From Octopus bimaculoides (taxonomy: Eukaryota): 49,780 bases of DNA. The position numbers were made by a program, and so were the translations under genes. This document shows positions 1 through 21,815 of the stretch, in pieces (the stretch's first letter is position 1; every line of letters begins with the position of its first letter). The DNA lies in the NCBI RefSeq assembly GCF_001194135.2, contig NC_068998.1, forward strand, positions 51,914,668-51,964,447. The letters are read 5' to 3'. The notes below the pieces were generated by a model. That model searched no databases. It was not told the origin of the DNA and saw only the letters and a list, made by a program, of their open reading frames with translations.

Positions 1-225
1 ATTGGTATGTTTATTTTTTTATATATTATTTTCTTCATTTTGTACTTCTTTGTAAAAAACATTTTCATTCTCCCTCTTCTTGAAAATTTGCTAGAAATTT
101 TTATTAAAATATGCTTCCAGTTTAGCATTCTGCCTTATTATTATTCTTCATTTTCCTATTATTTCTCCACGTGCGGTTAACACAACCCTACTATTTACTG
201 ACTTATATATATATATACATATATT

Positions 226-360
226 GGGATTCTTTCAGTTTCTGTCTACCAAATCCACCCACAGGCCTGAGATTATAGTAGAAGACATTTGCCCAGGGTA
301 CCACGCAGACTGAACCCTGAACCACATGGTTGGGAAGTAAGCTTCTTAGCGCACAGCCAG
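226..360 (-). mobile_element. tRNA-head SINE fragment (family A head)
   Basis: Reverse-complement of the recurring ...aagcttacttcccaaccatgtggttcagggttcagtc...gggcaaatgtcttctactat...ggtagacagaaactgaaagaa head seen many times in the window. Confidence 0.75.
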
Positions 361-1341
361 TGTGTGCTAAATTTCAAGTTGATTATCACCAAAGTAAAAT
401 GATGTTACATTCTTGCATTTGGCTGTTTGTGTCTTTATCATTGCGTGCATATATGAGTGTTTGTGTATACACTTATCTCTGCGTGTGTGCGTGTGTTTTG
501 GTCTCCTTGATAAGAGCTGATGGAGACAGTGGAGACAACTGTGATAACTATAATGATTCCTTCAGTTTATTTAGATAAATTATTTTTCATGTTTATTTTC
601 TTGCTTTCTTATATTGTTTAACCCAAACTTTATATATAAATTAGGTGAATGTAAATTTACATTCTAACATTAATGGCAGTGTGCATATGTGTGTGTGTAT
701 TTCAGAGTAAATCGTAGTATTTTCATTGGTTGAAGAAACATTGACGTAAAACCAGTTTTGCTTCCTGGTTGTTTCACACCTGCCCTGCACAAAAGAATGA
801 TTCTGGGGGTATCATATATTTCATTAGTCATATGGCCTATCTATAAGAACCTATATCATATTATTTGCATTACTCTCTTTCTCTCTCTTTCTCTCTTTAC
901 ATCTCCCTCCCTCTCTCTCTCTCTCTTTTTCTCACCCACCTCTCATTATTAGGACTATATATGAAACTGTATCAAACCATTTTTGTACTGCCAGGCATCT
1001 CATTTTCTGGTCACTTGTATTGTCACCCATCATTTACACCTTCCTTTGTCCATCATTTCCCCCTTCTCTTATTTTTGTCCTAATAACACTGTCTCTACCA
1101 TCATACTCTGACTTTTTTTCTTTTATCACCTCTCTCTCTCTCTCTCTCTCTCTTCTTCTTCTCCTCCTCAATCTCATCTGAGAAAACGTAGACGTCTTGA
1201 GGTACCGAATACTCTCTACATTTACAGTGTACAAGGCTTTGTATGAAAGCAGGGGCTACCAATAAAAACTGATTCAGACTGTGACGACCTGTCCAACTCA
1301 TACCAGTACGGAAAGCAGATGATGATGAGGAAGATTAAGAT

Positions 1342-1350
1342 ACACACACA

Positions 1351-1388
<38 letters not shown>
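1342..1388. repeat. (CA)n/(TG)n microsatellite joined head-to-head at CACGTG
   Basis: acacacacacac|gtgtgtgtgtgt..., directly visible. Confidence 0.95.
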
Positions 1389-1389
<1 letters not shown>

Positions 1390-2054
1390 CCATTGCTACG
1401 TTTATGTTAATTATGTTGTTTCTTTTATGCCGAAATATGACTTTACAATTCAATAGAAACCAATAGAGTAAATTCCAGGCTGACAGTCATATTGAAGTTG
1501 ATATGATCAACCAAGGACATTGAAGTAGTGCTCCAGTGTGGCCACAACCCAATGAATGAAACCAGAGTGAAAGAGTAAAAGAGACAAGGGTTGTCTTATG
1601 GAAATAGAGAATATAAGTATGATCACAGTTTGGAATTATGGTGTTGAGGATGTAATGTTGTGAATGTGGATGGGAAAAAATGAGATTCAGGTCAAACTTG
1701 GAGATATAATTTATCCACCTACGTGTCACATTGACTTTAGAAAACTAATTAGCTGATTAGTTTCTGATTAAGTGGAGCAGATAATTAATGACTTATGACT
1801 GTTTAAGAAGAAATATAAGTGAAGACCTGTATGAAAAAAAGGTGAAAAGGTGATGAGCAGTTATCGAAAAATTATCTAAATTGGAATTTACTGTTCACAC
1901 CAATGAGAGAATGAACGAGTCAAATAGTCAACTGAAATAAAATATTGAAGTTAAAAGATATTTTTGGTTAAGGGTTAAATTTTGTAGACAGGTCAACATT
2001 CTAACTAGATATGATAGATAGTAGACATATGTTTCACTATTCCAAGAATGGTTT

Positions 2055-2300
2055 TTTTTTATCCATGATGCAAGCAGCCACTCTAGTATAAGTGGTATGA
2101 TAAAATACATTCAGTACATGGTTGATGGTGAGAAAGGCATCCAATTGTGAAAAAAGAAAATGAAAGAAAAACAGGTCAAAAAACAAGATGTTCTTGTTAG
2201 CAATGTTTTTTTTTTTCTTTTTCTCTCTGTTGTTGTGACAAAGGATGATGACAAGCGTTGATATGCAGATATCAAATGATGATGATGATGATGATGATAT
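2055..2300 (+). mobile_element. Degraded SINE/LINE-tail copy with (ATG)n tail (family C tail)
   Basis: ggttgatggtgagaaaggcatcc motif and gatgatgatgatgat tail shared with other copies. Confidence 0.5.
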
Positions 2301-2792
2301 AAACAATCTGCTGCAACTTGAAAAAAAAAAAAAAACCCAAAATAGTCATGAAAAAAATAGACACAGTCATTAATTATACAGATCAGTTGATAGAATTGGA
2401 GTTATGAGCTAGAAATCTGAGAATCTAGTGTTTCAAATATGCTATTGATGTGTACTGATGACCGAAGACAAACTGGAAAAAATGTTTAGCAAAGTAAAGC
2501 ATTTTGTGATTTTTTTGCTTAAGCCCAAGACCTCCTATACTTATACGAGAAATAAAAGAAGAAAGTTTTGGTGTCCATAAAATTCTCTGTTTATTATGAA
2601 CATGTGTGAAATTGCTTCAACTATCAAATGAAATTGTTTTTGACTTTCTAAGCATGGTTCTTTCTGTGTTTTATTCAAAAGCAGTAATGGGGAACCGTTT
2701 TTTCCCTTATTATCCATAATCTTCTTCCTCCACAATTTCTGCCAACTTGGATCTCCTAACACTTCTTTTTCCATCTCTTATAATCCAAGTGT

Positions 2793-3170
2793 GGAGGTGC
2801 AATGGCCCAGTGGTTAGGGCAGTGGACTCACGGTCATAGGATCACGGTTTCGATTCCCAGACCAGGTATTGTGAGTGTTTATTGAGCGAAAACACCTAAA
2901 GCTTCACAAGGCTCCAGCAGGGGTGGTAGCAAACCCTGCTGTATTCTTTCACCACAACTTTCTCTCACTCTTTCTTCCTGTTTCTGTTGTACCTGTATTT
3001 CAAAGGGCCAGCCCTGTCACACTCTGTGTCACACTGAATCTCCCCGAGAACTATGTTAAGTGTTCACGTGTCTGTGGAGTGCTCAGCCACTTGCACATTA
3101 ATTTCACAAGCAGGCTGTTCTGTTGATCGGATCAACTGGAACCCTCATCGTCGTAATCGATGAAGTGCCA
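2793..3170 (+). mobile_element. tRNA-derived SINE (family F), well preserved
   Basis: Pol III A box TGGCCCAGTGG (2803-2813) and B box GGTTTCGATTCC (2846-2857), followed by about 310 nt of non-tRNA body; no full cloverleaf. Confidence 0.8.
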
Positions 3171-3369
3171 CATGCATTATATGTCTATACCAATGAAATC
3201 ATCTCTCAATAACTATTAACGCTGTACCACAATGCAAATCACTGGACATAAGGACAAGGAACTGCAACTCCCATGTTTATGCTGTGTCAATTGCCCTATG
3301 TCTACCGTGTCTACCATTAGATCTCACACATTAGACAACGAAGGAGGGAATCTATTTGAATCCACTCAC

Positions 3370-3545
3370 TCTGCTAGAAATAGCAGCAAAATCTCTCTCT
3401 CAAATCACATAGCCAATACTTTTTCAAAATAAAGTACAAAATAGATATGTTGTCTACAAAATAAGACAAAGGTAGGATTGTCATTGTTAGACACCTTCAC
3501 GCCTCAGTCAACTGCAGGTTGACCTGGGGTTTAAAAGAAAAGCAA
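3370..3545 (+). mobile_element. Interspersed repeat family G
   Basis: ctgctagaaatagcagcaaaatctc...tcaaatcaca and gacctggggt motifs recur in many copies in the window. Confidence 0.6.
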
Positions 3546-4494
3546 GAATAAACCGGACAATGAAGAGAAATGCAATTTGCTCAGACTGCTAAGTCAGTGT
3601 GCAGTGTGAACTTATCATGGTTACAGTATAGTATAATAACTGAACCTGTGGATCATTTAGTCATTTCACTAAATGCCAAAAGCTTTCTCATATAAAACCA
3701 ACTGGGAATGTACAATAACAACAATGTTAACAGTTTTAAACTATAGACTAATGGTGTTTTCTTTTACATAAGTGTTAAAAACACCACTGTAGTTAAAGGG
3801 TTTTATTCAGTAGAGAAATGACGTTTCACAGTTATTTTTTTTCAGCTTGAATAACCAATTATTTTGCAGGTAAATGTTTTCTCTGTGCATCATAGAAATA
3901 TTGAATTATCCCATCCTGGTTACAGTCTCTGCACAAATGAAAGTTCACTTCAGTTGTTGACTTGGGTTACTCAGGTGATTTAACTGGTGTTTGTTGTAAG
4001 GTCAAAGAGGTTAATGTATTTTTAAATAACTAGAAGTTTGGCAATTCCTGTTCTGGCTAAACAATATGGAATCCATCAAATGTGGGAAATTTGCGTCTCA
4101 GAAATTCAATTTGAAATAAATTGAGAGAATCAAAAATGACCACAAAATGGAAATTAATTTTCTATGAATTTACAAGAATTCACCAATGCGAAATTGGTAA
4201 ATTATGCATTTCTATATTTAGATTGATATATAAACCTGTGAATGAATTCTTTCTGAAGAATTATTAAGTTGATCACCTATGGATGTTTAGAAGTTTTGAA
4301 ACTTGTTACAGGCAAAGAATGTTACAGACATTCACCCTCTGGATTTTCCCTACCCTTTTCATTTCTACGTTTGTTGACCTGCAGCAATTTAAATGGAACA
4401 TTCCAGGGATCAACCTCACAAGTCTCAAAGACCCTACAAAGGTCATATGCAAACCCCTTTCCTCCACTCTAAGCAAGTAATACTAAATTTATAG

Positions 4495-4835
4495 GCATGA
4501 CTGTGTGATAAGAAGTTTGCTTCCCAGTCACAATGTTCTGGGTTCAGTCCCACTGTATGGCACCTTGGGCTGACCAATGACTTCTGAGTGGATTTGATTG
4601 ACAAAAACTGAAAGAAGCCCATTGTGTGTGTGTGTTTATCCCCCAGCCAATGCTTCACAGCCAGTGTTAGTGTATTTACATTCCCATAACTTAACAGTTT
4701 GGCAAGAGACCAATAGAATAAGCACCAGGTTTAAGAAAAAAAAGAAGTATTGGTGTCAATTCGTTTGACTACAATTTCTTCAAGGTGGTGCCCCAGCATG
4801 GCTGCATTTTAATTTCCGAAACAAGGGCGGGATAA
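4495..4835 (+). mobile_element. SINE family A head + D tail
   Basis: aagtttgcttcccag...gggttcagtcccactgtatggcaccttggg...aaactgaaagaagccc...ggtggtgccccagcatggc. The gcaccttgggc motif resembles the CORE-SINE domain start. Confidence 0.8.
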
Positions 4836-5711
4836 AAAAAAAGCCATCTTCTTCATTCCCTGTAAGTGATATTTATAGAATTTAACAAGGAATTTTTCAG
4901 AAATGGAAAGCTTTGTCCTCTGTCTTTTCGAAGTTGTCCACCATACTTTTATTTTTGCCATAAATAATAGATAGATGGAAACTGCCTGATATTTCTGACT
5001 AAAGAAAGACAACAGACTTAGCTTTCAGCCAGAACCCTCCTATATATGATAGCAAATGTTCAACAAAAGTCCCCAGGTTTACAATTTTCACGTATTTAAA
5101 CAAGTGTGTGAGAGAACAGTTTCAGTATATTCTCGTACATCTCAGATACAATTAGCTGGCCAGGACATACCCTAAACTAGCAGTACCTCCTGACAGTCCT
5201 GCCACACTGAAGAATTTAAGAAATTAAATATCTAACTATTTGAGATGAATGGTTGTTATTAAGATTTATTAGCATCACTTTACGATATTATGTAGGCAGT
5301 TTAAGTGTCTGGTAAGTTTCTGAGACCAGTTTAGTTGTATAAAACTTTTACGTATGGAAGTTTTAACTCTTGTAACGACACACATATATACATTAGTTGC
5401 TGCATATATCTCCTGTAATTATGTTTAATTTCATAGGAAAAATAAGCACACATATATTTACGATAACTCTCTTATCTGAAGCAATGCAACAATTATACAT
5501 ATTACTAATGTAATCTAAAATTCAATTAATTTCCAATATCATTTTCAAGAAATTTTGGCAATGATTAATGATGTTTCGTTAATATATCGAAGTGTTTCCA
5601 CTCAATATATTGAACATCTGATGTTATACAGATCCTTCGATCAAATTATATGTGTAAAGATACTTGCTTTCGTCTGATTTTAAACATCAATGCTTTCTTT
5701 ATTTGCTGTAG

Positions 5712-5717
5712 CTTGTC
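5712..5717 (+). CDS. Candidate 6-nt microexon (CTTGTC; Leu-Val if phase 0)
   Basis: tgctttctttatttgctgtAG|cttgtc|GTAAGT; 50-nt AG-free zone upstream, CTGAT branch-like motif at 5674-5678, three TGC motifs. No transcript evidence. Confidence 0.45.
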
Positions 5718-5861
5718 GTAAGTAATATTATGCTTTGAATATTAAGTACTTGAGATTGTTGAAAGACAATAGACTTTTATACTCTGTTGTACAAGGTCTG
5801 TACATGCAGAGTGCAAAATTACAGCTGTGACACAATTGTACTATTTTACGAGTTTCAAGTA

Positions 5862-6073
5862 GTGAGCTGGTAGAATCGTTAGCACATTAGGCAAAATACT
5901 TAGTGGCCCGTCCTTTGTCTGTACATTCTGAGTTCAAATTCTGTTGAGGTTGACTTTGCCTTTCATCTTTATAAGGTCGATAAAATAAGTACCAGTTGAA
6001 CACTGGGGTCGATGTAATTAACCCTACTGCCTCCCCCCAAAATACTGGCATTGTGCCAACATTTCAAAACAAT
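5862..6073 (+). mobile_element. SINE family B
   Basis: gtgagctggtagaatcgttagc...gagttcaaattctgttgaggttgactttgcctttcatc...ggtcgataaaataagtaccagttgaacactggggtcgatgtaat. A second partial copy follows at about 6133-6245. Confidence 0.85.
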
Positions 6074-7214
6074 ATTTTATGGGTTTGCTGTGAGTCTTAA
6101 AATTCCTCACATATATTTTTTTATCGCTGCTGTGTTCGGAGTTCAATTTCCGCCAAGGTCAACTTTGCCTTTCATCCTTTGGGGGTCGATAAATTAAGTA
6201 CCAATGAAACACTGGGGTTGATGTAATCGACTAGTGCTCGCCCCCATGCAGCTTCTTTTTAAGATAATAAAATGTAAGTTTGAGGGAGTTTGGACTGTTG
6301 TTTCAAGCAACTTGACTGACTCTGATAGTGAATGCTATTAACGTTGTTGTTGTTGTTATAGATTTCATCAAACTCAAGATCCATTTTTTTTTCCCCAGTT
6401 TTTTCTGTGCTTATGTACTTTACTTGAATGGAAGCCAATTCTGCATATATCTGCCATATAAAATTTACTTCAGAATTGATTGAAGTGTTATTCTTCTTTG
6501 GCAGTTTAGAAGAGATTTAAAGAATATTCATGAGGTTAGACTCACAGACTGGCTTAACTCTTTTATCACTTCAGACTGGCAGCCAACTTCAGGGGGCTGT
6601 AATCTTGTCAGCACTAGAAACCAAAATATCATCTGAGTTATTTTTAATGTCAAGATAATTGTGATTAGTAGAGATTCAGAACTTTTCTGACAATTTTTTA
6701 TATTTATTTATTTTTCTCAGTGGTTTGATGATTTTTATATTTTGGGCAGCATACTTCAAGGTTTATGGTAGGTACATGTGATGAGATGAGAGAGAAAATT
6801 ATTTTTAAAGTATTGAATAAATCTCTTAGTAATTTGATTCCAAAGCCGTGTTAGTCCTGCACTGAAATAGTTCACTTAAAAGTATTCATGTCTGTCAATT
6901 TTACACCACCACCGATGGACCAGATTCCAGGTGTATTCCCTTCTTTATTCTCTACTGGTTTCAGGCACCTGATGCAGTTATGCTGTGGCACTTCCTTGTA
7001 TAGGGAATCTGTACACCCCCGTGATTGGCTAAGTGAACTCTACCAGTTAGTATAAATGAGCATGCACAGAACAGTCTGAGAAGAGTGTCATATGTGCAGT
7101 CATATATTGTACAGGTCGTAGGAATTATTGAATAAAGATATTGGGGAATCCTTGTTGGATATACACAGTTGGAGAGTAATAAGAGAGCACAGGAACGTTT
7201 AATATTATAACAGT

Positions 7215-7650
7215 TCAGATATAACAGTGACAACATCATATCACTTCCAAAACATGATTTTGGGTTAAGTTCTGCCATGTGGTCCCTTGGGGTACTTTGA
7301 ACAAGTGTCTTTTATTACAGCTTTGGGTTGACAAAACTTTTGGGAGTGGATTCGTTTGGTGGAAACTGAAAAAAGCCCATCGTATATATGCGTGCATGTG
7401 TTTGGTTGTTTCTTTGTTTTGACATTGTGTGATAATTGAAAGCAGGCATCATCATCATCATCCTCATACAAGCAGTGTCATTCATTCCTAATCTTCCATA
7501 AAACCATAGTCTTTGGAACTTCTGCCATTCTTGGAAACAGGTGAAGGTTGGTGACAGGAAGGGCATTGAACTTGGAAAATCTGTTTCAACAAATTCTATT
7601 TGACCCATGCAAGCATGAAGAAACGGACATCAAAATGAGGGTAATGATAT
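7215..7650 (+). mobile_element. SINE family A head + C tail, near full length
   Basis: Head, aaactgaaaaaagccc, then ttggaaacaggtgaaggttggtgacaggaagggcat...gacccatgcaagcatg and an ATG-like tail. Confidence 0.75.
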
Positions 7651-8976
7651 CAACCTCTGTCGTTATTTCAGTTTGATACTTATTGCAATTATCTCTGTTC
7701 ATTGAGCTGCTAAATTACCTTTTTAATATAAAGGGAGAGGCAGCATGACACATCAGTCCACATGCACACAGCATTTGATGGGTTTCTGCGCAGTTCTGTG
7801 TTACAAGTTCCATTCTCAAGGCATTGCCAATACATGATAATTGTAGAAGGCGCTTACAATTCTATGCAGTAGGATTGAACTCAGAACCACAGAGTTGCAA
7901 AGTAACATTCTTAATGACACAGCCTTTACCTGTGCCTTCTCCAAATTTCTTTTGTCTCCTCACAAAAAGCATTATTGGCAGAGATTCACAACATGAAACT
8001 GAGAATCTGCCAAAAATCATGAGAAACAACAATTCCTTGTGTAGCAGCATTGTGAGATGATCTCAACTGTGACCACTTGAAGAGGAAGTTTTATGGCTGC
8101 TATGTCTAGAAGCCTATTCAACCACATAAAAGCTCCCTGTTTCCCTTGGTAATTTATTATAATATAATATAGAAATGGAGTTTATTGCTGAAAGTAATTT
8201 CAGTATTTTCCAGCATTTGGTTTGTTCCTTTCATATCTGTCATCTGACACAATTGAAAGTGCAACCCTGCTGTGGTCGATGTTTATCTCAAAGACAAACC
8301 TGATTTAACACATTTATGATCAATGGCATTCAAACTGCTGCCATCCCAGGTATTTTTTTGTTTTTCTTTCATTAATCCATCTCCATCTACAACATCTGGT
8401 ATGTCCTTTCTTTTATTGTAAAGACTGTGGGGTGTAATATGGCTGCTATTTTTAGCAGTTTGAGCAACCATGTAGACGTTCATTGATTGTTGTTGTAGAA
8501 ACTGCTGCTGTTGCTCAAACTACTGTTCTGAAGTTACAAATGATTGAACAACTCAATATAAGAAAAATAAAAGTTATATATGAGTTTAATTCAAATCAGC
8601 TTCTAAAAGAAACATCAATAAACCAGCATCTATTGGGAAAAGCTATCGATAAGCAATGGTCTATGGAATGATTAAAAGCTATATTGCAGTATAATGATGA
8701 AAATTTCAAAAGCACCGACCATAGCAATATTAACACCATAATAAAGTCTTCTGACTTATGTTATTAATATTATTTTCCTGCTATTGGATTCTTAGACTAG
8801 ATTTAACAACATATAACTTTTACTTCACTGATCTTCACTTTAAATGTTACCTGTCACTAAGCAGTTTCTCACACTTGTTGATTTTTAAGACTCATTTATT
8901 ATAGTTAATTGTATCTCTTGACGCACTTCCTTTTCTTAAACCTAATACTTATATTTACTATGCTCTATCACTTAGC

Positions 8977-9194
8977 TTCACCTTTTTGCATACCAAACCC
9001 ACCCAAGACAGCTACTGGTTACATGATACAAGCTTCCTGTTTTAAAGTGATCTAAATTAAAACCGTCCATCAAAATTCCATGCTAACTCATGTTCCAAGC
9101 ACCAGAGATGTTTTATTAAATTCCTCATAAATTTCAAGCTTAGTTGAAACAAAGGCAGTATATTTTAACGGAAGTATGGTGAGCAAAGGGTTCA
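8977..9194 (-). mobile_element. Short non-autonomous DNA-transposon-like repeat (possibly piggyBac-type MITE)
   Basis: Degraded inverted termini ttcacctttttgc / gcaaagggttca; shares internal motifs in reverse orientation with about 39190-39390. Confidence 0.5.
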
Positions 9195-9496
9195 TACACT
9201 TCTCCATGTATTTCTAGGGAGTTAGGACTTAGCCAAAGGAAGAAGAGTATCACTCATTATCCTCTGCAGAGCCTTTGTGACTAACGATGGTCATAGAGAA
9301 GTGAGGCACAAAGCTATCATCAGATTGACACGGTCTGCCTAGAATGTTTCCAACTGACTGGATTTTGCTAAAGGTATCCAATACAAGTTGGTGGTGTTAA
9401 ACCAAGTAGCAGATTAAGTGGTATCTTCTCATTATATTTCTATTCATCCTCCTCTGTTGAGCTAGCAACTGTCTTTGCTAGCTGATCAGTTTCCTG

Positions 9497-9890
9497 TGTC
9501 ATCATCATCATCCTAACATCCACTTTTCTATGCTTGCATGGGTTGGATGGAATCTATTAATGTAGATTTTCTATGACCGGATGCCTCCTGCTACCAACCC
9601 TCACTTCTTTCCAAGCGAGGTAATATTTTTTTCGTGACCAGACATATTCTCACAGGATATTGGAAATAAATGACATTCATTTATAACAATCACATGATGT
9701 CAAGACAAAGAGACACAAACATACACACACACATGTGCATGTACACACACACACATAGCTTTCAGTTTCCATGTATTAAATCCATTCACAAGGCTTTGGT
9801 CTGTCTGAATCTGTAGTAAAAACACCCCAAGTGCCACATTGTAGGACTCAACCTGAGACCACTTAACCACACAGCCATCCCTGCACCATA
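9497..9890 (-). mobile_element. SINE family A head + C tail
   Basis: catcatcatc...cacttttctatgcttgcatgggttggatgg...ctttcagtttcc...cacaaggctttgg...taaccacacagcc. Confidence 0.8.
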
Positions 9891-10315
9891 CAATATTATA
9901 TTTCATAGACTTGTCACACATAAATCTCTAAAACCATTTCTTATTTCAAAATGATTTAAAATTGTTTGAGATAGTTTTCTTTCTTTCTTCTTTTGCTTCC
10001 TTCCAAGTTAAAACTTTTATCATTTAATCTTTCATTAGAAGTGAAAGATGACTTATTACTATAATTTTTACCTGTCTCTTTGAAATGTTGTTGGTTTATC
10101 AAAGTTACCAATCATTTCTTATTCATTATTTTAGTTTCTTTTATTGTATTCTATTGACTTAACACCAACTTCCACTTTTGCTGCTGCTGCTATCTGCAAG
10201 TTTCTCGACTAAGTCTTTTAAGAGTCTCTGCTTGGTCTCCTTTGTCTTGTTTATTTTGTTTATATCATAGGCAAACTACAACAAATCTGCATCCAATTCA
10301 GAGGAAATGTGATTT

Positions 10316-10530
10316 CATCATCATCATCATTTAACGTCCATTGTCCTTGCTGGCATGGGTTGGACAGTTTCACCAGGGCTGGCAAACTGGGGAGCTGCAC
10401 CAGGTTCCAGTCTGATTGGACATGGTTTCTATGGTTGGATGCCCTTCACCAACCACTTTACAGAGTATGCTGTCACATTGTGATATGGTGCCACATGGTG
10501 TCACAGAGGCACTTTCACGTGGATTTTATG
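10316..10530 (-). mobile_element. SINE/LINE-tail family E/C
   Basis: catcatcatcatttaacgtcc...gctggcatgggttggac...ggatgcccttc. Confidence 0.75.
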
Positions 10531-12174
10531 TGACACAGCAATAATATGCCATGAAAACTAGTTCACTTACCTTACAATTTGCTTTACACACACACACACA
10601 CACACAAATTTCAAAAAATGAGAATGAGTGCATTGGTGGATAAATATTCTTTACTTGAGAGTTAACAAGGCTACCAATGGTTTCATGCAGAAAGAACTCT
10701 CCCAACAATTATCAAGCCTACCACATGGATCATTGGTACTCATCTTCCAGCATTCCCACAAATAAAGTGTATATATTTAGAGTGTACAGTAAATAGAAGT
10801 TTGAAAACAAAAGGTAAAACACTTAGCAGGTATTGTTAGAAAATGTCCTTCTAAAAGCTATTAGTTACTTGTCAGTTATAATCTTTATCAAAGTCGAAGC
10901 ACTGTGAACCAAATGAAAAGCAAAAATGAAAAATGAAAACTTGATAAAATCGGGCTGCAACAGAAACGGACAGAGTCAGTTCATTGCATGTTGCATTTTC
11001 AGGATGAATGAATAAAGGAGCATTTCTCATCGGCATGGAAATGCTTTTGTTTAAATTCCAGCGGGGCCAGTGACAAGAAGAAAACAATTATTGGGTGGAC
11101 ACTGAGCAGAAAGTTATTAAATTATGGTTAAATATTTAAATATTAAACATCTTTTCAGTGGTTTATTTAATTAAAATAAACATCAATCTTTAGATTTCTG
11201 ATTATGTTAAATCAAGTGTAGAAAATAAATAACATCATAGCACAGAAGACGATTGTAGTTGTGATTTATTTCATACAGAATGACTTAGGGATTTACAATT
11301 CAAATTATAATTCTCTTTCTTTTTCTTTAAATATGATTTTTATACAAGATTTGTTGAGATGACAGTTAAATGTCATTCTGGATAAATTTTGAATTATTTT
11401 TGCATTTTATAATTCCACAAGAATCAACTTTGTTCTTTCCTGGTTTATTAAAATACTAGGATTTAATCAGTTGACTATAAACATTAAAAAAAAAAAATTT
11501 TTTTTAAAGTGTGTTCTTGGTCTAATCAAATGAATTAGAGTAAATTATGATGTTTGAGTCAAAGAAAAGAAAAACTTATATTTTGGTGACTTAATTCAGT
11601 GTTTGAATTTTTGATATAACTAGAGATGTGCGTTCTCAGATTTGTATAATACTTATAAAAATAGATCAACCTAACTGTGGTTTTCAACTTTTGTATTAAG
11701 CACATTTCTTGGTTGATTATTCCTTTTAATCAAATGTTTGTGCGTGTGTGTGCATGTGTGCACTCATGTGTGTATCTGTATACTCTCACCACCAACTACA
11801 ACTCCCTCCATCTCTCTTATCTCTCTCTCTCATAGTAATACCTGAATAATGGGAAACGACACAGATATGTTGGTGTCTGATACTTCCCCCCACTCCTCAC
11901 CCTCTCTCTTTTTCCCCAGCAAATCTGTAGCTGCCATTAATGTCTCTCTCTATAACAAAACCTAATTAACAAGGAATTGCATCAGATCTAATACACACTC
12001 CCCTCTTCCACCCTCCACTTCTTCAGATATCCATCATATTCTTGACTAATCATCGCACACTTTCTTTTACCTGCTAATCTTCCTGTCCAATTCTACCAGC
12101 CACTGATGCCTCTCTCCCAAGTCACTCATTGACGTCCAAAACATTATTATCACCATCCATTTTTATGATTATCC

Positions 12175-12210
<36 letters not shown>

Positions 12211-13739
12211 TCCTAGCATTGCCTCTCCTAACCGTCACCCTCTTCAAGCTCCTACTTCATTACCATTTTCCACCCCATTTTATCTTCAGCAATCATACTC
12301 CCTTCTACCAATTTCTTATTCATGTTGGCCTACATGAATGGAGACAGTATTCAGTAGTGACAGTCCTGCTTTGTCCTTTTTAAAGACAAATAACCTCCCT
12401 AGTGTTGGTGCCACAATAAAATGCTCTCTGCACACTGTGTACAGTGATTAGAGAATTAATGGAGCCAGCACAGGGTTGAGAGGATCCTCGGTCTTGTATT
12501 ATTGAGAATATTGTTGGTTTTATGAGAAAATGTTCCCAGTACATTCTATACAGTGGCTGATGTGAGCAATGGTATAGCTTGAGTTGTTTGTCTTTCCTTT
12601 GAGTAAAAATCAACTGTGTGGAAAAGAGTGACTTGCATGTATGAGTAACTGCTAGTTTTCCTCAAACAAATCTCACCCGGGTTTGTGGAAGCATGTGCAA
12701 ATGCATAGTAAACCTTGACTAATGGAGGCCCTACTTGAAGGCAGTATGCAATTATGGCCAAATTCCAGTGGCTCAAACCTGTAAAAAGATACACATGACT
12801 ATATTCCCTTGCCATCTTGATACCTTCAAACATACTTTCATAATCTCCTTTCGAATAACTTTATAACTAATTTATTAATAATGCAATTTCCAGGACACCA
12901 TGCATCATATGCTGTAAATCTTTTATGCTAAAGAATGTTACTCAATGTCGCATGCTGTTTAAGCTTGTTTGAAGAGTTGCCATATCATATAGAATATATG
13001 AGATCCTTTCTTCAGAATTATAGTATCAGTGTTTATCAGATAAAGTTCAAAGAATCTATGTTAAATGACAGTGACAGCTATCAAGTTTTCAAATAAATTT
13101 TGAAGAAAATTTCCATCATTCATATTAATGTGTAGAAAGCAGATGTGTGGCTAATGAATGGCATAGCAACGTTAGCAGTCAGTCACAGCAAGGAGTAGAA
13201 AGTCTTCAGTGATGTAATTCAAATAGTAATATGTGTTTACATACTTAGAACCACATGAACATATATATGAAACATAATTTCTTGGAGAGGAAAATATGTT
13301 ACTTGATAAAGCTACTGGAAATATTTTTCTCTTTCTTTTCTCAACATGTCTTTTTTCTTTTTATTTCTCTTAACAAAAGAAATTTTTCAGAATTAGTTTA
13401 AACTGCTGATTAGAAATGGAACAGCAATGCATTATCATATTTCTGCAAAGAGCAGAAGAGTGGTTTAATCATAAGAGTTAATCTAGGCTGCCATTTGAAA
13501 CTTGAAATTCAAAAATGTTCATTTTATTGAAAACTTATTTATTTAAAGAAAATAAATGTTGTAAGTAATGCTTATAGATTAGCATGTTGTTTTGTTGCAT
13601 TCTTGCTTAATACTTTTAAATTACTTATAAATTTCTAAAAATTTCATAATTATAAGTATGACTTGGTCTTAGAGCTAGAAATATAACAGCAGCTTTTTTT
13701 TTCTGTGTGTGTGTGTGTGTGTATGTGTCGAAAAGTGTG

Positions 13740-14220
13740 CTTGAGAAGACTTGTCAAGCCAAGTGAAATCGTAGTTGTTGCCAATGCTGATGTCACGTAA
13801 CTGACACATAAAAGGCACCCATTACATTCTTGGAGTGGTTGGTGTGAGGAAGAGCATCCAGCTGTAGAAACCATGCCAAATCAGATTAGAACCTGATACG
13901 GCTTACCAGTTTCAGTTAAACTGTCTAACCCATGAGAGCATGGAAAGCAGATGCTAAACAAGGATGATAATGATGTGTGGTAAGTAGCTTGCTAACCAAC
14001 CACATGGTTCCTGGTTCAGTCCCACTGCGTGACACCTTGAGCAAGTGTCTCTTACTATAGCCTTGGGCTGACCAAAGCCTTGTGAATGGATTTGGTAAAT
14101 GGAAACTGAAAGAAGCCTGTCGTATGTGTGTGTTTATTGTCTGTGTTTGCCCCCCACCTTCCAACATCACTTGACAACCGATGTTGGTGTGTTTATGTCC
14201 CTGTAACTTAGCAGTTCAGC
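13740..14220 (+). mobile_element. Family E/C copy (13740-13972) abutting a family A copy (13974-14220)
   Basis: ggaagagcatccagctgtagaaaccatgccaaatcag...catggaaagcagatg then gtgtggtaagtagcttgctaaccaaccacatggttcctggttcagtcccactgcgtgacaccttgagcaagtgtc. Confidence 0.8.
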
Positions 14221-15714
14221 GGTGAGTTACTTTTAATAAATTGAATATTAAAAAAAAAAAAAAATCAACCTGAACTTAAAAAATGAAAATGTTTGTAAAA
14301 ACAAGGTTGGCAGTCAGGAAAATGATAATCTTGAGGCATATAATTCCATTAAACAATTCTAATTTTATAAGAAACTACAAAGTTGAAAGGAGTTATGTGA
14401 ATTATTTGCAGAATAGGTCAGGAAATTAATATACATTTATGTACAACACCAGCGAATATCTTAGAAAATGTAAAATAAATTCAAAGTATTTAAATTACAT
14501 TTTCTTCAGCCTTTTGCTGTGGAACTTTAAATGGATGTCAATATATTTTGACATGTTTCACAGCTTGTTAACCATTCCTCAGAAGATAAGTACCTCTCAT
14601 TTCTCCTTTGCTTATGAAGGGAACTTATACCCAATAGCTGTTTAAACCTAGGACAAACTAGCACATGCTGTTTTGTGCATAAATGTTTATTTAACTATTT
14701 AATCAGTTTGCTGGCAAATGCACAATATGAAAATTAGTCTGGCCATTACAGCTAACTTCTAGTTTGTCATGGAGTTAAATGGCAATTGACCATAAGCTCT
14801 CTCTCTCTCTAGGCAGGATAGTGTGGAGTATTTATCTTCTACTGAATGGCCAACTTGGTATAAAACATGTCAAAACTAACTACTCTTTTTTTTACAAAGT
14901 GAGAGCGAAATATATTGACCTCTATTTAAACTTGCACATTGAAGGCTTAAAAACTCCTTAACTACTTTGAATTTATCTTATATATCAGGAAATTGTTTGT
15001 TTGACAATAAATTATGTCATTCTTCGTGTGTAGTACAATGAGGTCCAGTTTCTTTTCTTATCTTATTTTTCCTTGCTTTATGCTACATTAAAGTGTTATT
15101 TTCTCATCTCCGATCTGAAAAATAGCCATACTAAAAATTTCCAACATGTTTTAGTCTGTGTTTTTTCCTTTCCTTCTTTTGTTTGTAAATCAAATGCTAA
15201 CTGAATTCAGTAAAATTCTTTCTTGGATATTTTTATCTGTCGCTTCCTTCAGACTAAAACTATTTCTCATAACCATTCTCTTGTTGCTTATTTCTTTTCT
15301 TACCAAAGATAGTTTTCAATTGATTTTCTTTTTCCCTGTCCTATTGCTCTTCATATTTCGACATCTTGTAGTAGTAAGAGCTATGATGCACCTGATATCT
15401 TTCTAACTTTTGACCTTCTCTCGTTGCTTCTCTCATTGTTTTAGTTCATTTATACACACACACACAATATATATATATATATATGTATATATATTACTCT
15501 TCCTCCTAGCAAAAATATGTTTCCAGTTGACATCTCATGTCTCAATTCTGGCTATCATATTTCTTTTGATGAATCTTGTAAAAATATGCCAGATGTTGAC
15601 AGCACAAGAAAATTACTTTTGGTAAGTGTGGCTCCATTGAATGTTTTCCAGTGACATTAATGGCATATAATAAATGGGCTTATGGGCAAGAAAAGAAATA
15701 TATATGTATATCTA

Positions 15715-15906
15715 TCTATCTACACCCGTCTCTTATATGTAATATATATATATAGTGTGTGTGTGTGTATGTATATATATATAGAGAGAGATATAGATAT
15801 ACATATAAATATACACACACCCATACATATATATGTATGTATGTATGTATTTATATAAATATATATATTTACATACATACATATACACACACATATATGT
15901 ATATAT

Positions 15907-15947
<41 letters not shown>

Positions 15948-15950
15948 CAT
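15715..15950. repeat. Compound TA/TG/GA/TATG microsatellite
   Basis: Directly visible. Confidence 0.9.
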
Positions 15951-15959
15951 AAATGTACC

Positions 15960-16375
15960 ATGATAATGTCTGCTTTTCCATTTTTGCATGGGTCAGACAA
16001 GGCTTCTTTGAGATAGAATATTTCTACAACCAGATGCCCTTCCTGTCATGAACCCTCACCTGTTTTTAAGCCTGTAAACATTTCCCTCAGTCTATCAATG
16101 GAGAGTCTGGTCATGTTCTCAGAGGATCACAGCCAAATGACATCCTTTATATTACCAGTCACTCTTTACAACTAACACATATATCCAGACGCACACACAC
16201 ACACACATTCACATGTAATACACACACACATACAAAAAATGGAATTTTTCTGGTTTCTGTCTACTAAATTTTGTTCTCAAGGTATTAACTTAGTCAACCA
16301 GCGCGTGGTGGAAGTTAGCCCCTACCAAGCCACATGGTTCTGGAGGTGAACATTCTAATCACACAGAGATGCTTC
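15960..16375 (-). mobile_element. SINE family A head + C tail
   Basis: ctgcttttccatttttgcatgggtcagac...gatgcccttcctgtc...ttttctggtttctgtctactaaat...ctaatcacacag. Confidence 0.65.
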
Positions 16376-16394
16376 TGCCTATTATAATGTGTGT

Positions 16395-16675
16395 GAAGGT
16401 CCAGTGGTTAAGGTGTTACGTTCACAATCTAGTGGTCATGAGTTCAATTCCCAGACCAAACAGCATGTTGTGTTTTTGAGCAAAACACTTCATTTCACAT
16501 TGCTCCAGTTAGTTCCCTCAGCTGTAAATGGGTAACCCTGCAATAATCTAGCCCCCACCCCAAACAATGAGAATGTCAGCCTGCTTGCCTGCCAGTCGGG
16601 TGACATCATTCTAAAGTGATGCAAAGTGCATTGTGACCAGCGAGGTATAACAGCATCCCATTGCCTGGTCAATCA
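16395..16675 (+). mobile_element. tRNA-derived SINE family H
   Basis: ggtccagtggttaagg (A box-like), gagttcaattccc (B box), tgtttttgagcaaaacacttcatttcacattgctccag...cagctgtaaatgggta; reverse copies at about 22395-22545, 27435-27590, 44005-44130. Confidence 0.75.
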
Positions 16676-16913
16676 CATCATTCATACATATATATATATA
16701 TATACATACACACAAATTACATTATTGCATTAATTATATTATCGCTTAATAAAAGTAAATTAGATATTGCTGTCTGCTTAAAAGTATATTTTCATGTTTT
16801 CTCAATATGCATGTGTATATACATCCACACCAATCATATTTATGGATTCTTTATTAATTACTCAAGTTATTTTCTATGTACGATTACTTTAAATGAATTT
16901 ACTTATATATATG

Positions 16914-16951
<38 letters not shown>

Positions 16952-17450
16952 TACATATATGTACAAATGCTTGTGTGAGTTAGAGGTTAAGAAACCATCT
17001 AAGGGATATTAAATATCCAATATACTACTGGATATGTACCTACGTATTTTTAACCAAGTGCTTACTATTGCATGGCAATATTGCAATTGAATATTAGGTA
17101 TGGGTGGGTACGTGCATGAGAGAGAGAGAGTATGTGCATGCTTGTGTACGTCGGAGTGTACTCTTTCATATATGTGTCTGAGTTTGCATGTCTTTGTACT
17201 AATATCACTGGATAGTTATAGACAAGTGTCCTTGTCACACGTGTGGATTCCCTTGTTTCCAGTCTTTCATGAAAAATATATCTAACTTTGGGATAATATT
17301 ACCTTACTTGGAAAGAGGAAGGGTACTCAGACATAGAAAAATCTGCCTCAGTAAATTCAGTCTGACTCATGAAAGCATGACCATGTGGACGTTAAACAAA
17401 AAAAATTATGATAGCAGTTGCTGTTGTTTAACAGTATTTCAAATCAGGCA

Positions 17451-17650
17451 GTCAGCTGGTAGAATGGTTAGCAAACCAAGCAAAATCCTTAGTGGTATTT
17501 TGTTCTGAGTTCAAATTCTGCTGAGGTCGATTTTACCTTATATCCTTCCATGGTTAATAAAATAAGCTCCAGTTGAGCATTGGGTTTGAGGTAATTGACT
17601 TAACCCCTCCCCCAAAATTGCCAGCCTTGTGCCAAAATTCGAAACCAATA
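17451..17650 (+). mobile_element. SINE family B
   Basis: gtcagctggtagaatggttagc...gagttcaaattctgctgaggtcga...ccttgtgccaaaattcgaaaccaat. Confidence 0.8.
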
Positions 17651-18189
17651 TTTCAAATATCAATTCCAATATCTATTTTGATGGCCAGTTTCAGCCATTT
17701 GGATACATTTGAGAATGTAACCTTTGTTTCCCTCGACCAATCTTATTAATGACCTCTTACGCTGTCAGCCAGTACACTCCCCAATTTAAATAAAAATCTG
17801 AGACATACAATTTAGACTCTAATTCCTTAAGGAATTCAGAAATAACACTTAGCTTGTCAGTTTTCAGTTGGAAAAATTGAAAGATAATTTCTAATATTAT
17901 ATCATTCACAAAGTAAATTGATAATTCCTGTTTGTTATCATTGAAGATAAAACTATATTGAAACAGAAATGACAACATAATCACAATGCTTTTCATTGGA
18001 AACAGTGGCTAAATTGTACTTCCAATTTAGAGGACTTAAGAGGTAGTAACTAAACAGAGAATAACAGAATGACAGATCGCTGGAGACTCTGTTCCTCATG
18101 TCATAGTCATGGTTCTTTTCCATTCTTTTTCAATGTGTCATCGATTGAAAATGTAAAATAACTGCTGAGTCAATTCTAGACATACTGTT

Positions 18190-18520
18190 CTTTTTGTTTT
18201 GTTGTTTATTCCCAGGTCAGCCCTTATAGAGTTGGCCAAAACTTAAAGGCTGTCATCAATCCATGACCATCCAGTCAATTGTATCTTTTCAGGTATAACC
18301 TATGTAAAATCACATGGTCTTTTTTTTTTTTTTTTGCTCTTTAGAATCAGGTCAAATTTGATTAAGCAGTCCTCCTATGATCAAAAAACATTCCTTTTGC
18401 ATCCCATCTTTTCATAAGGTCTAGAATTATGCTATCCAATGTGTCCTCTTAGTTATACAGTTAGCTGATATTTGAAGGAATTTGGTTGTTATTTCAATTC
18501 TAACAGGTTGAATTTCTATA
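18190..18520 (-). mobile_element. Interspersed repeat family G
   Basis: gttgtttattcccaggtcagccc... and tccaatgtgtcc...tttgaaggaatttggttgttatttc; further copies at about 19715-19890 (-) and 20330-20430 (+). Confidence 0.55.
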
Positions 18521-19077
18521 TTGAAGCTCTCCTATGACTTCATGTATTCTTTTTCCTTTTTTTTTTTTTTGAAAAAGATGGGAAGGCATGATTTAAGAAA
18601 TATATAGCTGTTATTTTTGGCAGCTCTTGTTATCAAAAAGGGGCTCTCAAGTTGGCTTTTGTGTAATATACAATGCAAGAGAGTTCAGTACTGTAAATTG
18701 AGGACTTTTCAACACTGCTTTATTATGACAAAGTGAATGGATTCCTGATTTAAACATCAGATAAGGAATTCTTATCTCAAAAATCAGATGGAAATAGAAT
18801 TACTGAGTTCTTTGAATAGAAAGAAAATCTGGTGGATTCCTTTTGCAAAGATTGATTTTATCCCCTAAGAGAAATAGCCCACATCTTAATGTAAGCTCTA
18901 AATTCCATTATCTAGCAGGAAAACAACTAGAAAGGGATGAGATTGGGGGTGGGGGGCAATTGTATGTAACATAATATCAGATCATTCTCTTAATTACTAT
19001 GTCTTAATTTTCTAGTTCTGGCTTTCATAAAAAGAAAGACTTTGGTTTGTGTTATCACCTATACATATATGTGTATG

Positions 19078-19200
<123 letters not shown>

Positions 19201-19261
19201 ATATAAGGCAAATGAAAGACGGAAGATGGAATATATGAGAATTTATTACTGTATATATATC

Positions 19262-19530
19262 TTTTACTTGTTTCAGTCATTGGACTATAACCATGCTGGG
19301 GCACCACCTGGAAAGGTTTAGTTGAACAAATTGCTCTCTCAGTACTTATCTTTTACCTATAGTACTTATTTTATTGCTCCCTTTTGTTGAACTGCTAAGT
19401 TATGGGGACATGTACAAACCAACACCGGTTGTCAAACAGTGGTAGGGGACAAATACTAACATGAAGACACACACACACACTCTCAAGGCTTCGGTTGATG
19501 TGGTACTATAGTAGGAAATACATGCCCAAG
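19262..19530 (-). mobile_element. SINE family A + D tail
   Basis: ttttacttgtttcagtcattgg...ccatgctggggcaccac...gaactgctaagttatggggacatgtacaaaccaacaccggttgtcaa. Confidence 0.8.
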
Positions 19531-21475: not shown

Positions 21476-21628
21476 TTTATTATATATATGCATACTAATA
21501 CACAACCCACATTGGACTCCTCATTCATATCATTATCGAACCTGAAGGAGCTTAACTATGGTCTGTCCATAGCACTTCCTCAGTGTTGTGTGACACCGTT
21601 GGGTCTTCTTGACACCAATACCTCTCGT

Positions 21629-21679
21629 ACCCTCAATATATATATACACATATATATATATGTATATATACACACACAT

Positions 21680-21737
<58 letters not shown>

Positions 21738-21815
21738 CCATATTTACACATATATCTACACACTCACATATACACATGCATGCACATATATTTATGTGTA
21801 TGTGTGTATATGTGT
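21629..21815. repeat. (TA)n/(CA)n compound microsatellite
   Basis: Directly visible. Confidence 0.92.

What the first reader, a model, noticed from the sequence alone, without database searches (positions are those of the whole stretch)
5660..5723. Candidate 6-nt in-frame microexon with an SRRM/eMIC-type acceptor upstream of the DGK C1B domain
Seen: tgctgtAG|CTTGTC|GTAAGT with a 50-nt AG-free zone (5660-5709), a CTGAT branch-like motif about 34 nt upstream, a pyrimidine-rich tract and TGC at 5665, 5691 and 5704. Known: neural microexons regulated by SRRM3/4 (eMIC domain) in bilaterians are frame-preserving and have UGC next to the 3' splice site. Inferred: the downstream DGK exon is phase 0, so inclusion would add Leu-Val in the C1A-C1B linker, possibly neuron-specifically. 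Gene finders would miss it. The exonic -1 base (C) is suboptimal, and a chance match remains possible.
Basis: partly seen in the sequence, partly recalled or inferred. Interest (0 to 1): 0.75.

Follow-up and report, generated by a model that had tools for sequence, protein, structure and literature searches.

The report
Unconfirmed 6-base microexon candidate in octopod DGK-zeta
The splice-like pattern is really there, in the right intron and reading frame of an argonaut diacylglycerol kinase zeta gene, but no transcript or protein from any cephalopod shows it being used, so it is most likely a chance look-alike that public RNA-seq could settle quickly.

Summary
The sequence observation is exact: AG|CTTGTC|GTAAGT at 5710-5723, a 50-nt AG-free zone, CTGAT 34 nt upstream, and TGC at 5665, 5691 and 5704.

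The window holds two coding exons of a type IV (zeta/iota, rdgA-like) DGK. They match the Argonauta hians protein GAB1605773.1 exactly: 24449-24517 (start of C1B, phase 0) and 40358-40390. The upstream exon (...CKPTFREAGVRNYRE) lies outside the window. The candidate therefore sits in the correct intron (>24.4 kb), and inclusion would give NYRE-LV-PTNM.

Against a real exon:
- All seven cephalopod DGK-zeta proteins examined, and seven decapodiform RNA-seq contigs, lack any insert.
- The linker is 20 residues in 102 of 118 homologues.
- The pattern was picked post hoc. Chance expectation is 0.01-0.09 per 50 kb of sense strand, which means hundreds of look-alikes genome-wide. A generic splice matrix finds antisense decoys that score as well.

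For a real exon:
- Bivalve DGK-zeta isoforms carry 5-14-aa cassette inserts at exactly this junction.
- Fly rdgA has eMIC-dependent exons.

No cephalopod intron DNA or reads could be reached, so conservation and expression are untested. I put a real microexon at about 0.15 and a chance pseudo-exon at about 0.75.

The parts
5660..5711 (+). Acceptor-like region of the candidate. It has a 50-nt AG-free zone, the branch-like CTGAT at 5674-5678, a pyrimidine-rich tract at 5693-5709, TGC at 5665, 5691 and 5704, and the AG at 5710-5711.
   Evidence: Read directly. AG positions were listed. It is one of 17 UGC-type acceptor-like sites on the sense strand. Weight-matrix score 5.3, against 7.2 and 7.9 for the two real acceptors.
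5712..5717 (+). Candidate 6-nt exon CTTGTC (Leu-Val in phase 0). Its use is not shown.
   Evidence: No cephalopod protein or transcript contig carries an insert at this junction.
5718..5723 (+). Donor-like GTAAGT. The intronic part is perfect, but the exonic -3..-1 bases are GTC, which is non-consensus.
   Evidence: It is one of 15 GTAAGT sites on the sense strand. Weight-matrix score 1.4, against 7.6 (40391) and -1.0 (24518) for the real donors.
24449..24517 (+). Real coding exon, 69 nt, phase 0/0, encoding [23 protein letters not shown] (start of C1B). Acceptor ttgcag, donor GTTAAT.
   Evidence: It is identical to residues 415-437 of P0051 (Argonauta hians DGK zeta-like).
40358..40390 (+). 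Real coding exon, 33 nt, phase 0/0, encoding SFQQRFTFQSK. Acceptor tttccag, donor GTAAGT.
   Evidence: It is identical to residues 438-448 of P0051.
1..24448 (+). The 3' part of the intron between the ...CKPTFREAGVRNYRE exon (not in the window) and the C1B exon. The candidate lies 18,731 nt upstream of the C1B exon.
   Evidence: tblastn of P0051 against the window finds only the two exons above. The gene spans 136.8 kb in GCA_054771915.1.

Best explanation
The site is a chance pseudo-exon. An acceptor-like tract and a consensus GTAAGT happen to lie 6 nt apart, deep inside a very long (>24 kb), AT-rich intron of the Argonauta DGK zeta-like gene. Such a pair is normally ignored by the spliceosome. 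A 6-nt exon cannot be defined by ordinary exon definition, and nothing shows that a dedicated activator acts here. The mRNA joins ...NYRE directly to PTNM..., as in every cephalopod sequence available.

Shown: the motifs, the gene, the intron, the phase, and the absence of the insert from the available cephalopod products.
Inferred: that the site is not used.
For: (1) No insert is seen in any of seven cephalopod DGK-zeta proteins: the Argonauta hians model, Octopus vulgaris, O. sinensis and O. bimaculoides RefSeq/GenBank models, and three decapodiform Logan products. Seven RNA-seq contigs from seven separate runs read AGAGAG|CCAACT straight through.
(2) The stretch from the last Cys of C1A to the first His of C1B is 20 residues in 102 of 118 homologues and nearly invariant in sequence.
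(3) Chance expectation is 0.01-0.09 per 50 kb of sense strand. For a ~1.5-Gb genome (PMC12682272) that implies hundreds of such look-alikes in introns. This is my extrapolation.
(4) A generic splice matrix does not separate the candidate from antisense decoys.
(5) 15 other UGC-type acceptor-like sites in the same window have no exon.
(6) The exonic half of the donor (GTC) is non-consensus.
Against: The full combination is uncommon. It comprises an in-frame 6 nt with no stop, a 50-nt AG-exclusion zone, UGC between the pyrimidine tract and the AG, a branch-like CTRAY motif, and a perfect intronic GTAAGT. None occurred on the antisense strand, and P is about 0.02-0.07 for the window.

The same exon junction hosts genuine cassette exons in bivalves. 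The fly orthologue rdgA has eMIC-dependent exons.

Assemblers and gene models routinely miss 6-nt exons and minor isoforms. The tissues of the RNA-seq contigs are unknown, and they come from decapodiforms, not octopods.
Confidence: 0.75

Rival explanations
1. It is a real, alternatively included 6-nt microexon of the SRRM (eMIC) type. In neurons or photoreceptors an eMIC-bearing Srrm234 protein would bind the UGC next to the 3' splice site and help early spliceosome assembly on the distant branch point. That would allow the strong intronic GTAAGT to define the tiny exon. The product would carry Leu-Val between Glu414 and Pro415, six residues before the first zinc-binding His of C1B. This would change the spacing of the two C1 domains.
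For: The architecture matches the published cis-code: a long AG-exclusion zone and UGC close to the 3' splice site, after the pyrimidine tract (PMC8797185; 10.1101/2024.09.17.613571). The exon is frame-preserving in a phase-0 intron. 6-nt eMIC-dependent exons exist in Drosophila (RasGAP1, RhoGDI), and rdgA itself is a target. Bivalve orthologues have cassette exons at this junction. The chance expectation is low but not negligible.
Against: There is no transcript, protein or conservation evidence, and all available cephalopod products skip it. A hydrophobic LV is unlike the polar or acidic bivalve inserts. The donor bases at -1 to -3 are non-consensus. The site was selected post hoc. I did not check whether cephalopods have an eMIC-bearing SRRM.
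Confidence: 0.15
2. Cephalopods do have an alternative microexon in this intron, as bivalves do, but it is somewhere else. It could be in the unseen 5' part of the intron or at another site, such as the T16-UGC acceptor at 18345 (AATCAG, Asn-Gln, weak donor GTCAAA). The 5712 site would then be a decoy.
For: Bivalve isoforms and transcript contigs carry 15-42-nt inserts at the NYRE|QTFMR junction. The exon boundaries are conserved between Pinctada and Argonauta. Site 18345 outranks 5712 with the generic matrix.
Against: No cephalopod product has any insert here. No in-frame AG...GT segment in 1-24448 resembles the bivalve inserts beyond chance. Pinctada itself shows no obvious copy, so the exon is not universal even among bivalves.
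Confidence: 0.06
3. The splice-like sites are used, but not to make a coding microexon. Examples would be a stepping stone for piecewise removal of the very long intron, or part of a rare cryptic or poison exon built with a different partner site.
For: The intron is >24 kb. GTAAGT is enriched on the sense strand (15 versus 4, binomial P = 0.02).
Against: Recursive sites need AG|GTRAGT so that a donor is regenerated after the first step. Here AG is followed by CTTGTC. No AG|GTAAGT occurs on the sense strand. There is no expression evidence.
Confidence: 0.04

Closest known systems
SRRM3/SRRM4 (eMIC-domain) dependent neural microexons of vertebrates and Drosophila
   Same: Length within 3-27 nt and frame-preserving. 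Long AG-exclusion zone. UGC between the pyrimidine tract and the AG. A distal branch-like motif. Consensus intronic donor. The host is a neuronal/phototransduction signalling gene.
   Different: Inclusion, neural enrichment, SRRM dependence and conservation are all undemonstrated. The exonic part of the donor is non-consensus. There is no UCUC-type repeat, only CUUUCUUU.
Cassette exons at the NYRE|QTFMR junction of bivalve DGK zeta. Examples: Crassostrea virginica ATDCDAS, C. gigas DNDCEPS, Ostrea edulis ENDTEPS, Mytilus ENSLTECSNT, Mya HDGRS, Dreissena NGNGPGH and PDPVLTPPYCYKPH.
   Same: Exactly the same phase-0 exon junction in the orthologous gene. They are alternative: isoforms with and without the insert occur in the same species (Ostrea X5 versus X17, Mytilus edulis X43 versus X44/X46). 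They are also seen in transcript contigs.
   Different: 15-42 nt rather than 6 nt. Polar or acidic rather than Leu-Val. No sequence similarity. Their tissue specificity and regulator are unknown, and their genomic acceptors could not be fetched.
Drosophila rdgA eMIC-dependent exons DmeEX0009223 (52 nt) and DmeEX0009224 (54 nt)
   Same: Same gene family (type IV DGK), from my own knowledge of the family. They are eMIC-dependent, and rdgA is listed among the eye-enriched targets (PMC8797185).
   Different: Much longer. Their position in the protein could not be mapped here.
Intronic pseudo-exons (decoy splice-site pairs in long introns)
   Same: Deep intronic position, no expression evidence, and a score within the range of antisense decoys.
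   Different: The combination with a UGC-type acceptor and a perfect GTAAGT 6 nt away is rarer than a typical decoy.

Membership tests
SRRM3/4 (eMIC)-dependent neural microexon | Exon of 3-27 nt that preserves the reading frame | tested here: met
   6 nt, Leu-Val, with no stop, in a phase-0 intron
SRRM3/4 (eMIC)-dependent neural microexon | UGC motif close to the 3' splice site, downstream of the pyrimidine tract, within a long AG-exclusion zone and with a distal branch point | tested here: met
   TGC at -8..-6 and at -21..-19. AG-free zone of 50 nt. CTGAT 34 nt upstream. Criteria taken.
SRRM3/4 (eMIC)-dependent neural microexon | Strong 5' splice site (mammalian targets) | tested here: inconclusive
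   The intronic GTAAGTA is perfect, but the exonic bases are GTC. The generic matrix gives 1.4, against 7.6 for the neighbouring real GTAAGT donor. MaxEnt models were not available.
SRRM3/4 (eMIC)-dependent neural microexon | Actually included in mRNA, with neural enrichment | not testable with these tools
   No reads or tissue data are reachable. The available cephalopod proteins and RNA-seq contigs show only skipping.
SRRM3/4 (eMIC)-dependent neural microexon | Inclusion depends on an eMIC-bearing SRRM protein | not testable with these tools
   This needs a knock-down or co-expression experiment.
SRRM3/4 (eMIC)-dependent neural microexon | Conservation of the exon and its flanking intron in related species | not testable with these tools
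   The Argonauta gene exceeded the 100-kb limit for returning DNA; I assumed the Octopus genes would too and did not look them up. ORF look-ups and a metagenome scan gave nothing usable.
Mollusc DGK-zeta inter-C1 linker cassette exon (seen in bivalves) | Lies in the intron between the ...NYRE exon and the (Q/P)T.MRHHW exon | tested here: met
Mollusc DGK-zeta inter-C1 linker cassette exon (seen in bivalves) | Sequence or length similarity to the bivalve inserts (5-14 aa, polar or acidic) | tested here: not met
   The candidate is 2 aa, Leu-Val. No similar segment was found in 1-24448.
Mollusc DGK-zeta inter-C1 linker cassette exon (seen in bivalves) | Present in transcripts or annotated isoforms of the species | tested here: not met
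   None of the seven cephalopod sequences has an insert at this junction.
Recursive splice site | AG immediately followed by GTRAGT, so that a donor is regenerated | tested here: not met
   AG is followed by CTTGTC. There is no AG|GTAAGT on the sense strand.

The most novel reading that the evidence does not exclude
A cephalopod 6-nt, SRRM/eMIC-type neural or photoreceptor microexon inserts Leu-Val into the otherwise length-invariant linker between the two C1 domains of the rdgA-type DGK. It would sit at the very exon junction where bivalves independently carry 15-42-nt cassette exons. That would be a case of recurrent microexon evolution at one position of a phototransduction and synaptic lipid kinase across molluscs. 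Fly rdgA is an eMIC target as well.
Probability: 0.15. Interest if true: 0.55.

Novelty: not a real feature. Interest (0 to 1): 0.27.

Why it matters
If real, it would be one of very few microexons documented in a cephalopod. It would lie in the orthologue of Drosophila rdgA, a kinase central to rhabdomeric phototransduction and DAG signalling. It would also be a concrete example of the same exon junction being reused for tissue-specific microexons in different mollusc lineages. That would make the role of inter-C1 spacing in type IV DGKs testable.

If it is a chance match, as I think most likely, the lesson is practical. Motif-only microexon calls in cephalopod introns tens of kilobases long have low predictive value. 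From the rates measured here I expect hundreds of equally good look-alikes per genome, so such calls need junction reads or conservation before they are believed.

The side observation stands on database evidence and is worth following up: bivalve DGK-zeta genes carry alternative cassette exons at this junction.

Tried and rejected
2. A human DGKZ sequence recalled from memory served only as a tblastn probe to locate exons. It was then replaced by the real Argonauta protein P0051.
3. Transposon or repeat origin of the site is rejected. No other copy of 5200-5850 exists in the window, and the SINE-like repeats begin at 5855.
4. A recursive-splicing site is rejected, because there is no AG|GTRAGT.
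5. A structured RNA or tRNA-like element is rejected: no Rfam family and no tRNA in the window.
6. I searched the intron for a homologue of the bivalve inserts and found only chance-level matches.
7. Bivalve genomic loci that carry the cassette exon were not on record for six proteins tried. The one bivalve locus obtained (Pinctada imbricata, L008) confirms the conserved exon boundaries but shows no convincing microexon in its 4.6-kb intron.
8. Cephalopod intron DNA could not be reached. The Argonauta gene is too long for the tool. Ten window ORFs are not in the collection. A 20-mer scan of metagenomes gave one unrelated random hit.
9. Mapping the Drosophila rdgA eMIC exons onto the protein through the published RT-PCR primers found no match among the proteins held.
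10. An AlphaFold model of the tandem C1 region had mean pLDDT 39.7 and is unusable.
11. The supplement of the 2026 bilaterian tissue-splicing preprint, which includes Octopus bimaculoides, is not held.

Full report
**What is in the sequence.** Positions 5660-5723 read atacttgctttcgtctgattttaaacatcaatgctttctttatttgctgtAG|CTTGTC|GTAAGT. AG dinucleotides in the neighbourhood are at 5630, 5658, 5710 and 5721 only, so 5660-5709 is a 50-nt AG-free zone. CTGAT is at 5674-5678, and TGC is at 5665, 5691 and 5704. CTTGTC translates to Leu-Val.

**Which gene, which intron.** Two short coding exons lie on the + strand.
- 24449-24517 encodes [23 protein letters not shown]. Its acceptor is ttgcag and its donor GTTAAT, and it is phase 0 at both ends.
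- 40358-40390 encodes SFQQRFTFQSK, with donor GTAAGT.

I first located these exons with a human DGKZ sequence recalled from memory. An exhaustive HMMER search with the joined 34-aa peptide then found one protein that is 100% identical over all 34 residues, P0051. P0051 is 1185 aa and is named diacylglycerol kinase zeta-like [Argonauta hians], GAB1605773.1. Its gene spans 136.8 kb on a 21-Mb contig of GCA_054771915.1. It has two C1 domains, DAGK catalytic and accessory domains, ankyrin repeats and a C-terminal ETAV. From my own knowledge of the family, that makes it a type IV (zeta/iota, Drosophila rdgA-type) DGK.

tblastn of P0051 against the window recovers only these two exons. The preceding exon (...KNMRCKPTFREAGVRNYRE) lies upstream of the window. 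The candidate therefore sits inside the correct intron, more than 5.7 kb from its 5' end and 18,731 nt from the C1B exon. Inclusion would give ...[14 protein letters not shown].... I infer that the window comes from A. hians from the exact peptide match. The tool returned no DNA for that gene, so I could not compare the contig directly.

**Is the pattern beyond chance?**
- Markov simulations. First- and third-order models trained on the window give 0.000-0.003 matches per 50 kb when every threshold equals the candidate's own value. The thresholds were GTAAGT, AG-free zone of at least 50 nt, at least 75% pyrimidines, and TGC within 20 nt. Moderate thresholds give 0.02-0.03, and dropping the TGC requirement gives 0.17-0.24.
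- Semi-empirical estimate. Markov models understate the patchiness of real introns, so I also counted features in the real sequence. The sense strand holds 17 UGC-type acceptor-like sites. One is the real C1B acceptor, one is the candidate, and 15 have no exon. It also holds 24 GTRAGT sites. The expected number of in-frame pairs 3-27 nt apart is 0.074, or 0.011-0.017 at the strictest thresholds.
- Generic weight matrix. The candidate ranks third of 860 in-frame, stop-free AG...GT pairs in 1-24448 with a total score of 6.7. Three antisense decoys score 7.1-8.5. The real 33-nt exon scores 15.5. The real 69-nt exon scores about 6.2, so this matrix is a blunt tool here.

The configuration is therefore uncommon for one window (roughly P = 0.02-0.07), but the thresholds were post hoc. 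Scaled to the introns of a ~1.5-Gb genome (PMC12682272), it should occur by chance hundreds of times. That scaling is my extrapolation.

The site is not part of a repeat present elsewhere in the window. It does not overlap any Rfam family or tRNA-like element. It is not a recursive splice site.

**Protein and transcript evidence from cephalopods.** A full-length search with P0051 returned orthologues from across the animals. Cluster look-ups added further cephalopod sequences. All seven cephalopod sequences have the same 20-residue stretch CKPTFREAG(V/I)RNYREPTNMR before HHWVH, with no insert:
- the Argonauta hians model;
- Octopus vulgaris CAI9735816.1;
- O. sinensis XP_029645737.1;
- O. bimaculoides XP_052830231.1;
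- three decapodiform products from Logan RNA assemblies, whose 90% cluster includes a Sepia pharaonis fragment.

Seven transcript contigs from seven sequencing runs (SRR8281663, -673, -680, -681, -690, -691 and SRR7369732) read CGGAATTACAGAGAG|CCAACTAACATG with nothing in between.

This is negative evidence of moderate weight. Assemblies report the major isoform. The tissues are unknown to me. The contigs are from decapodiforms, and 6-nt exons are notoriously missed.

**Evidence from other animals.** Among 118 homologues in which the motif could be located, the stretch from the last Cys of C1A to the first His of C1B is 20 residues in 102 and 21 in two. A separate set of shorter proteins and fragments was 19-20 residues in nearly all. 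The sequence is nearly invariant from molluscs to hemichordates, so this is not a loose linker.

The exceptions are informative. They are inserts of 5-14 residues placed exactly at the NYRE|QTFMR exon junction:

| Species | Insert |
|---|---|
| Crassostrea virginica | ATDCDAS |
| Crassostrea gigas | DNDCEPS |
| Ostrea edulis | ENDTEPS |
| Mytilus | ENSLTECSNT |
| Mya arenaria | HDGRS |
| Dreissena polymorpha | NGNGPGH and PDPVLTPPYCYKPH |
| two unnamed transcript-derived products | ENCNTELFQT and PESEFSPAPAQTG |

Insert-free isoforms exist in the same species (Ostrea X17; Mytilus edulis X44, X46, X48). One gastropod model (Babylonia, VRGCTFSILN) begins with Val-Arg-Gly. That looks like read-through of a GTAAGAGG-type donor, so I discount it.

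The Pinctada imbricata locus (L008) shows that the exon boundaries on both sides of this intron are conserved between bivalves and the argonaut. Its 4.6-kb intron has no convincing microexon. This junction is therefore a genuine site of alternative cassette exons in bivalves. That raises the prior for something similar in cephalopods. However, the argonaut candidate shares neither length nor sequence with those exons, and no segment resembling them is present in 1-24448.

**Literature.** The cis-code of eMIC-dependent exons is a long AG-exclusion zone, UGC close to the 3' splice site, a long pyrimidine tract and a strong branch point (PMC8797185). In mammals it includes a UCUC...UGC bipartite enhancer between the branch point and the AG, and a strong 5' splice site (bioRxiv 10.1101/2024.09.17.613571). 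The candidate fits the acceptor side well and the donor side partly.

The same Drosophila study lists rdgA among eye-enriched eMIC targets, with two exons of 52 and 54 nt. It also lists 6-nt targets in RasGAP1 and RhoGDI. I could not map the rdgA exons onto the protein. A 2026 preprint reports widespread recurrent evolution of neural exons in the same genes across bilaterians and includes O. bimaculoides. Its tables are not held. No paper in the library combines DGK, cephalopods and alternative splicing.

**Weighing.**
- For a real exon: the complete eMIC-like layout, the correct frame, a neuronal and phototransduction gene whose fly orthologue is an eMIC target, and a junction proven to accept cassette exons in bivalves.
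- Against: no expression or conservation evidence of any kind, uniform skipping in all cephalopod products, a strongly length-constrained linker, a hydrophobic dipeptide unlike the bivalve inserts, non-consensus exonic donor bases, post hoc selection, and a chance rate that implies many look-alikes genome-wide.

I put the probability of a real coding microexon at about 0.15 and a chance pseudo-exon at about 0.75. The remainder is split between a true microexon elsewhere in this intron and some non-coding use of the sites.

**Mechanism, if real (inferred, not shown).** An eMIC-bearing SRRM protein in neurons or photoreceptors would bind the UGC at -8..-6. It would promote early spliceosome assembly on the distal CTGAT branch point. 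The GTAAGT donor could then define the 6-nt exon. The product would have the two C1 domains spaced two residues further apart.

**What I could not do.** I could not look at reads, obtain any other cephalopod's intron, or obtain a bivalve locus that carries the cassette exon. I did not test whether cephalopods have an eMIC domain. An AlphaFold model of the tandem C1 region was too poor to use (mean pLDDT 39.7).

The decisive test is simple. Search A. hians and Octopus neural RNA-seq for CTTGTCCCAACGAATATGAGAC, a string that does not occur in the window genome.

Noticed in passing
Proteins P0225-P0229, P0231, P0236, P0242, P0244, P0246, P0249, P0253, P0256 (homologues; junction equivalent to window 24448|24449): Bivalve DGK-zeta isoforms and transcript contigs carry alternative inserts of 5-14 aa exactly at the NYRE|QTFMR exon junction. 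Oysters have ATDCDAS, DNDCEPS and ENDTEPS; Mytilus has ENSLTECSNT; Mya has HDGRS; Dreissena has NGNGPGH and a 14-aa form. The oyster and mussel versions look related (E-N-x-T-E-x-S).
   Followed up: partly
window 40356-40368: The 33-nt exon has a second acceptor-like CAG 9 nt inside it (ccag|TCCTTCCAG|CAAAG). Using it would delete Ser-Phe-Gln in frame. It scores 13.0 against 15.5 for the annotated site with the generic matrix. No product lacking SFQ was seen among the cephalopod proteins.
   Followed up: no
window 24518-24523: The constitutive 69-nt C1B exon uses a poor donor, AAG|GTTAAT (matrix score -1.0). Human-derived splice matrices therefore transfer badly to this genome.
   Followed up: no
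window, whole: GTAAGT is much commoner on the sense strand than on the antisense strand (15 versus 4, binomial P = 0.02; GTRAGT 24 versus 11). UGC-type acceptor-like sites are also commoner on the sense strand (17 versus 6). Only two real exons are present. The cause is unknown.
   Followed up: partly
window 5855-6245; copies at 17444-17653, 20593-20682, 23189-23409, 31309-31393, 34826-34962, 40947-41308: A family of short interspersed repeats, 70-82% identical, occurs in both orientations, including a tandem pair just downstream of the candidate. ARAGORN and Rfam do not call them tRNA.
   Followed up: partly
window 18314-18356: A second microexon-like site: a T16 tract, then GCTCTTTAG|AATCAG|GTCAAA (Asn-Gln). 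It has a 50-nt AG-free zone and a TGC at -9, but a weak donor. It outranks the reported candidate with the generic matrix.
   Followed up: no
P0339 (Octopus bimaculoides XP_052830231.1) versus the other cephalopods; outside the window: The O. bimaculoides model has a 7-aa insert VRGFVEK inside C1A, between DPDCT and KSGPRKKC. It also has a divergent stretch in the accessory domain. The Val-Arg-Gly start suggests read-through of a donor, or an alternative 5' splice site.
   Followed up: no
P0051 (Argonauta hians model) versus Octopus and decapodiforms; outside the window: The Argonauta model lacks an 11-residue segment (VREHINQLYME...) after ADLEQ, and a further segment near the ankyrin repeats. 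Both are present in all the other cephalopod sequences. These may be skipped or missed small exons in the annotation.
   Followed up: no
L001-L007 (decapodiform RNA-seq contigs): The decapodiform transcripts encode a 941-949-aa form with a different, short N-terminus (MAEGSSNSLNPG...). It replaces the ~290-residue N-terminal region of the octopod models, which points to an alternative promoter or first exon.
   Followed up: no
window 36899-37149 and 44194-44203: There are two assembly gaps (runs of N), both flanked by (TA/TG)n-type microsatellites.
   Followed up: no
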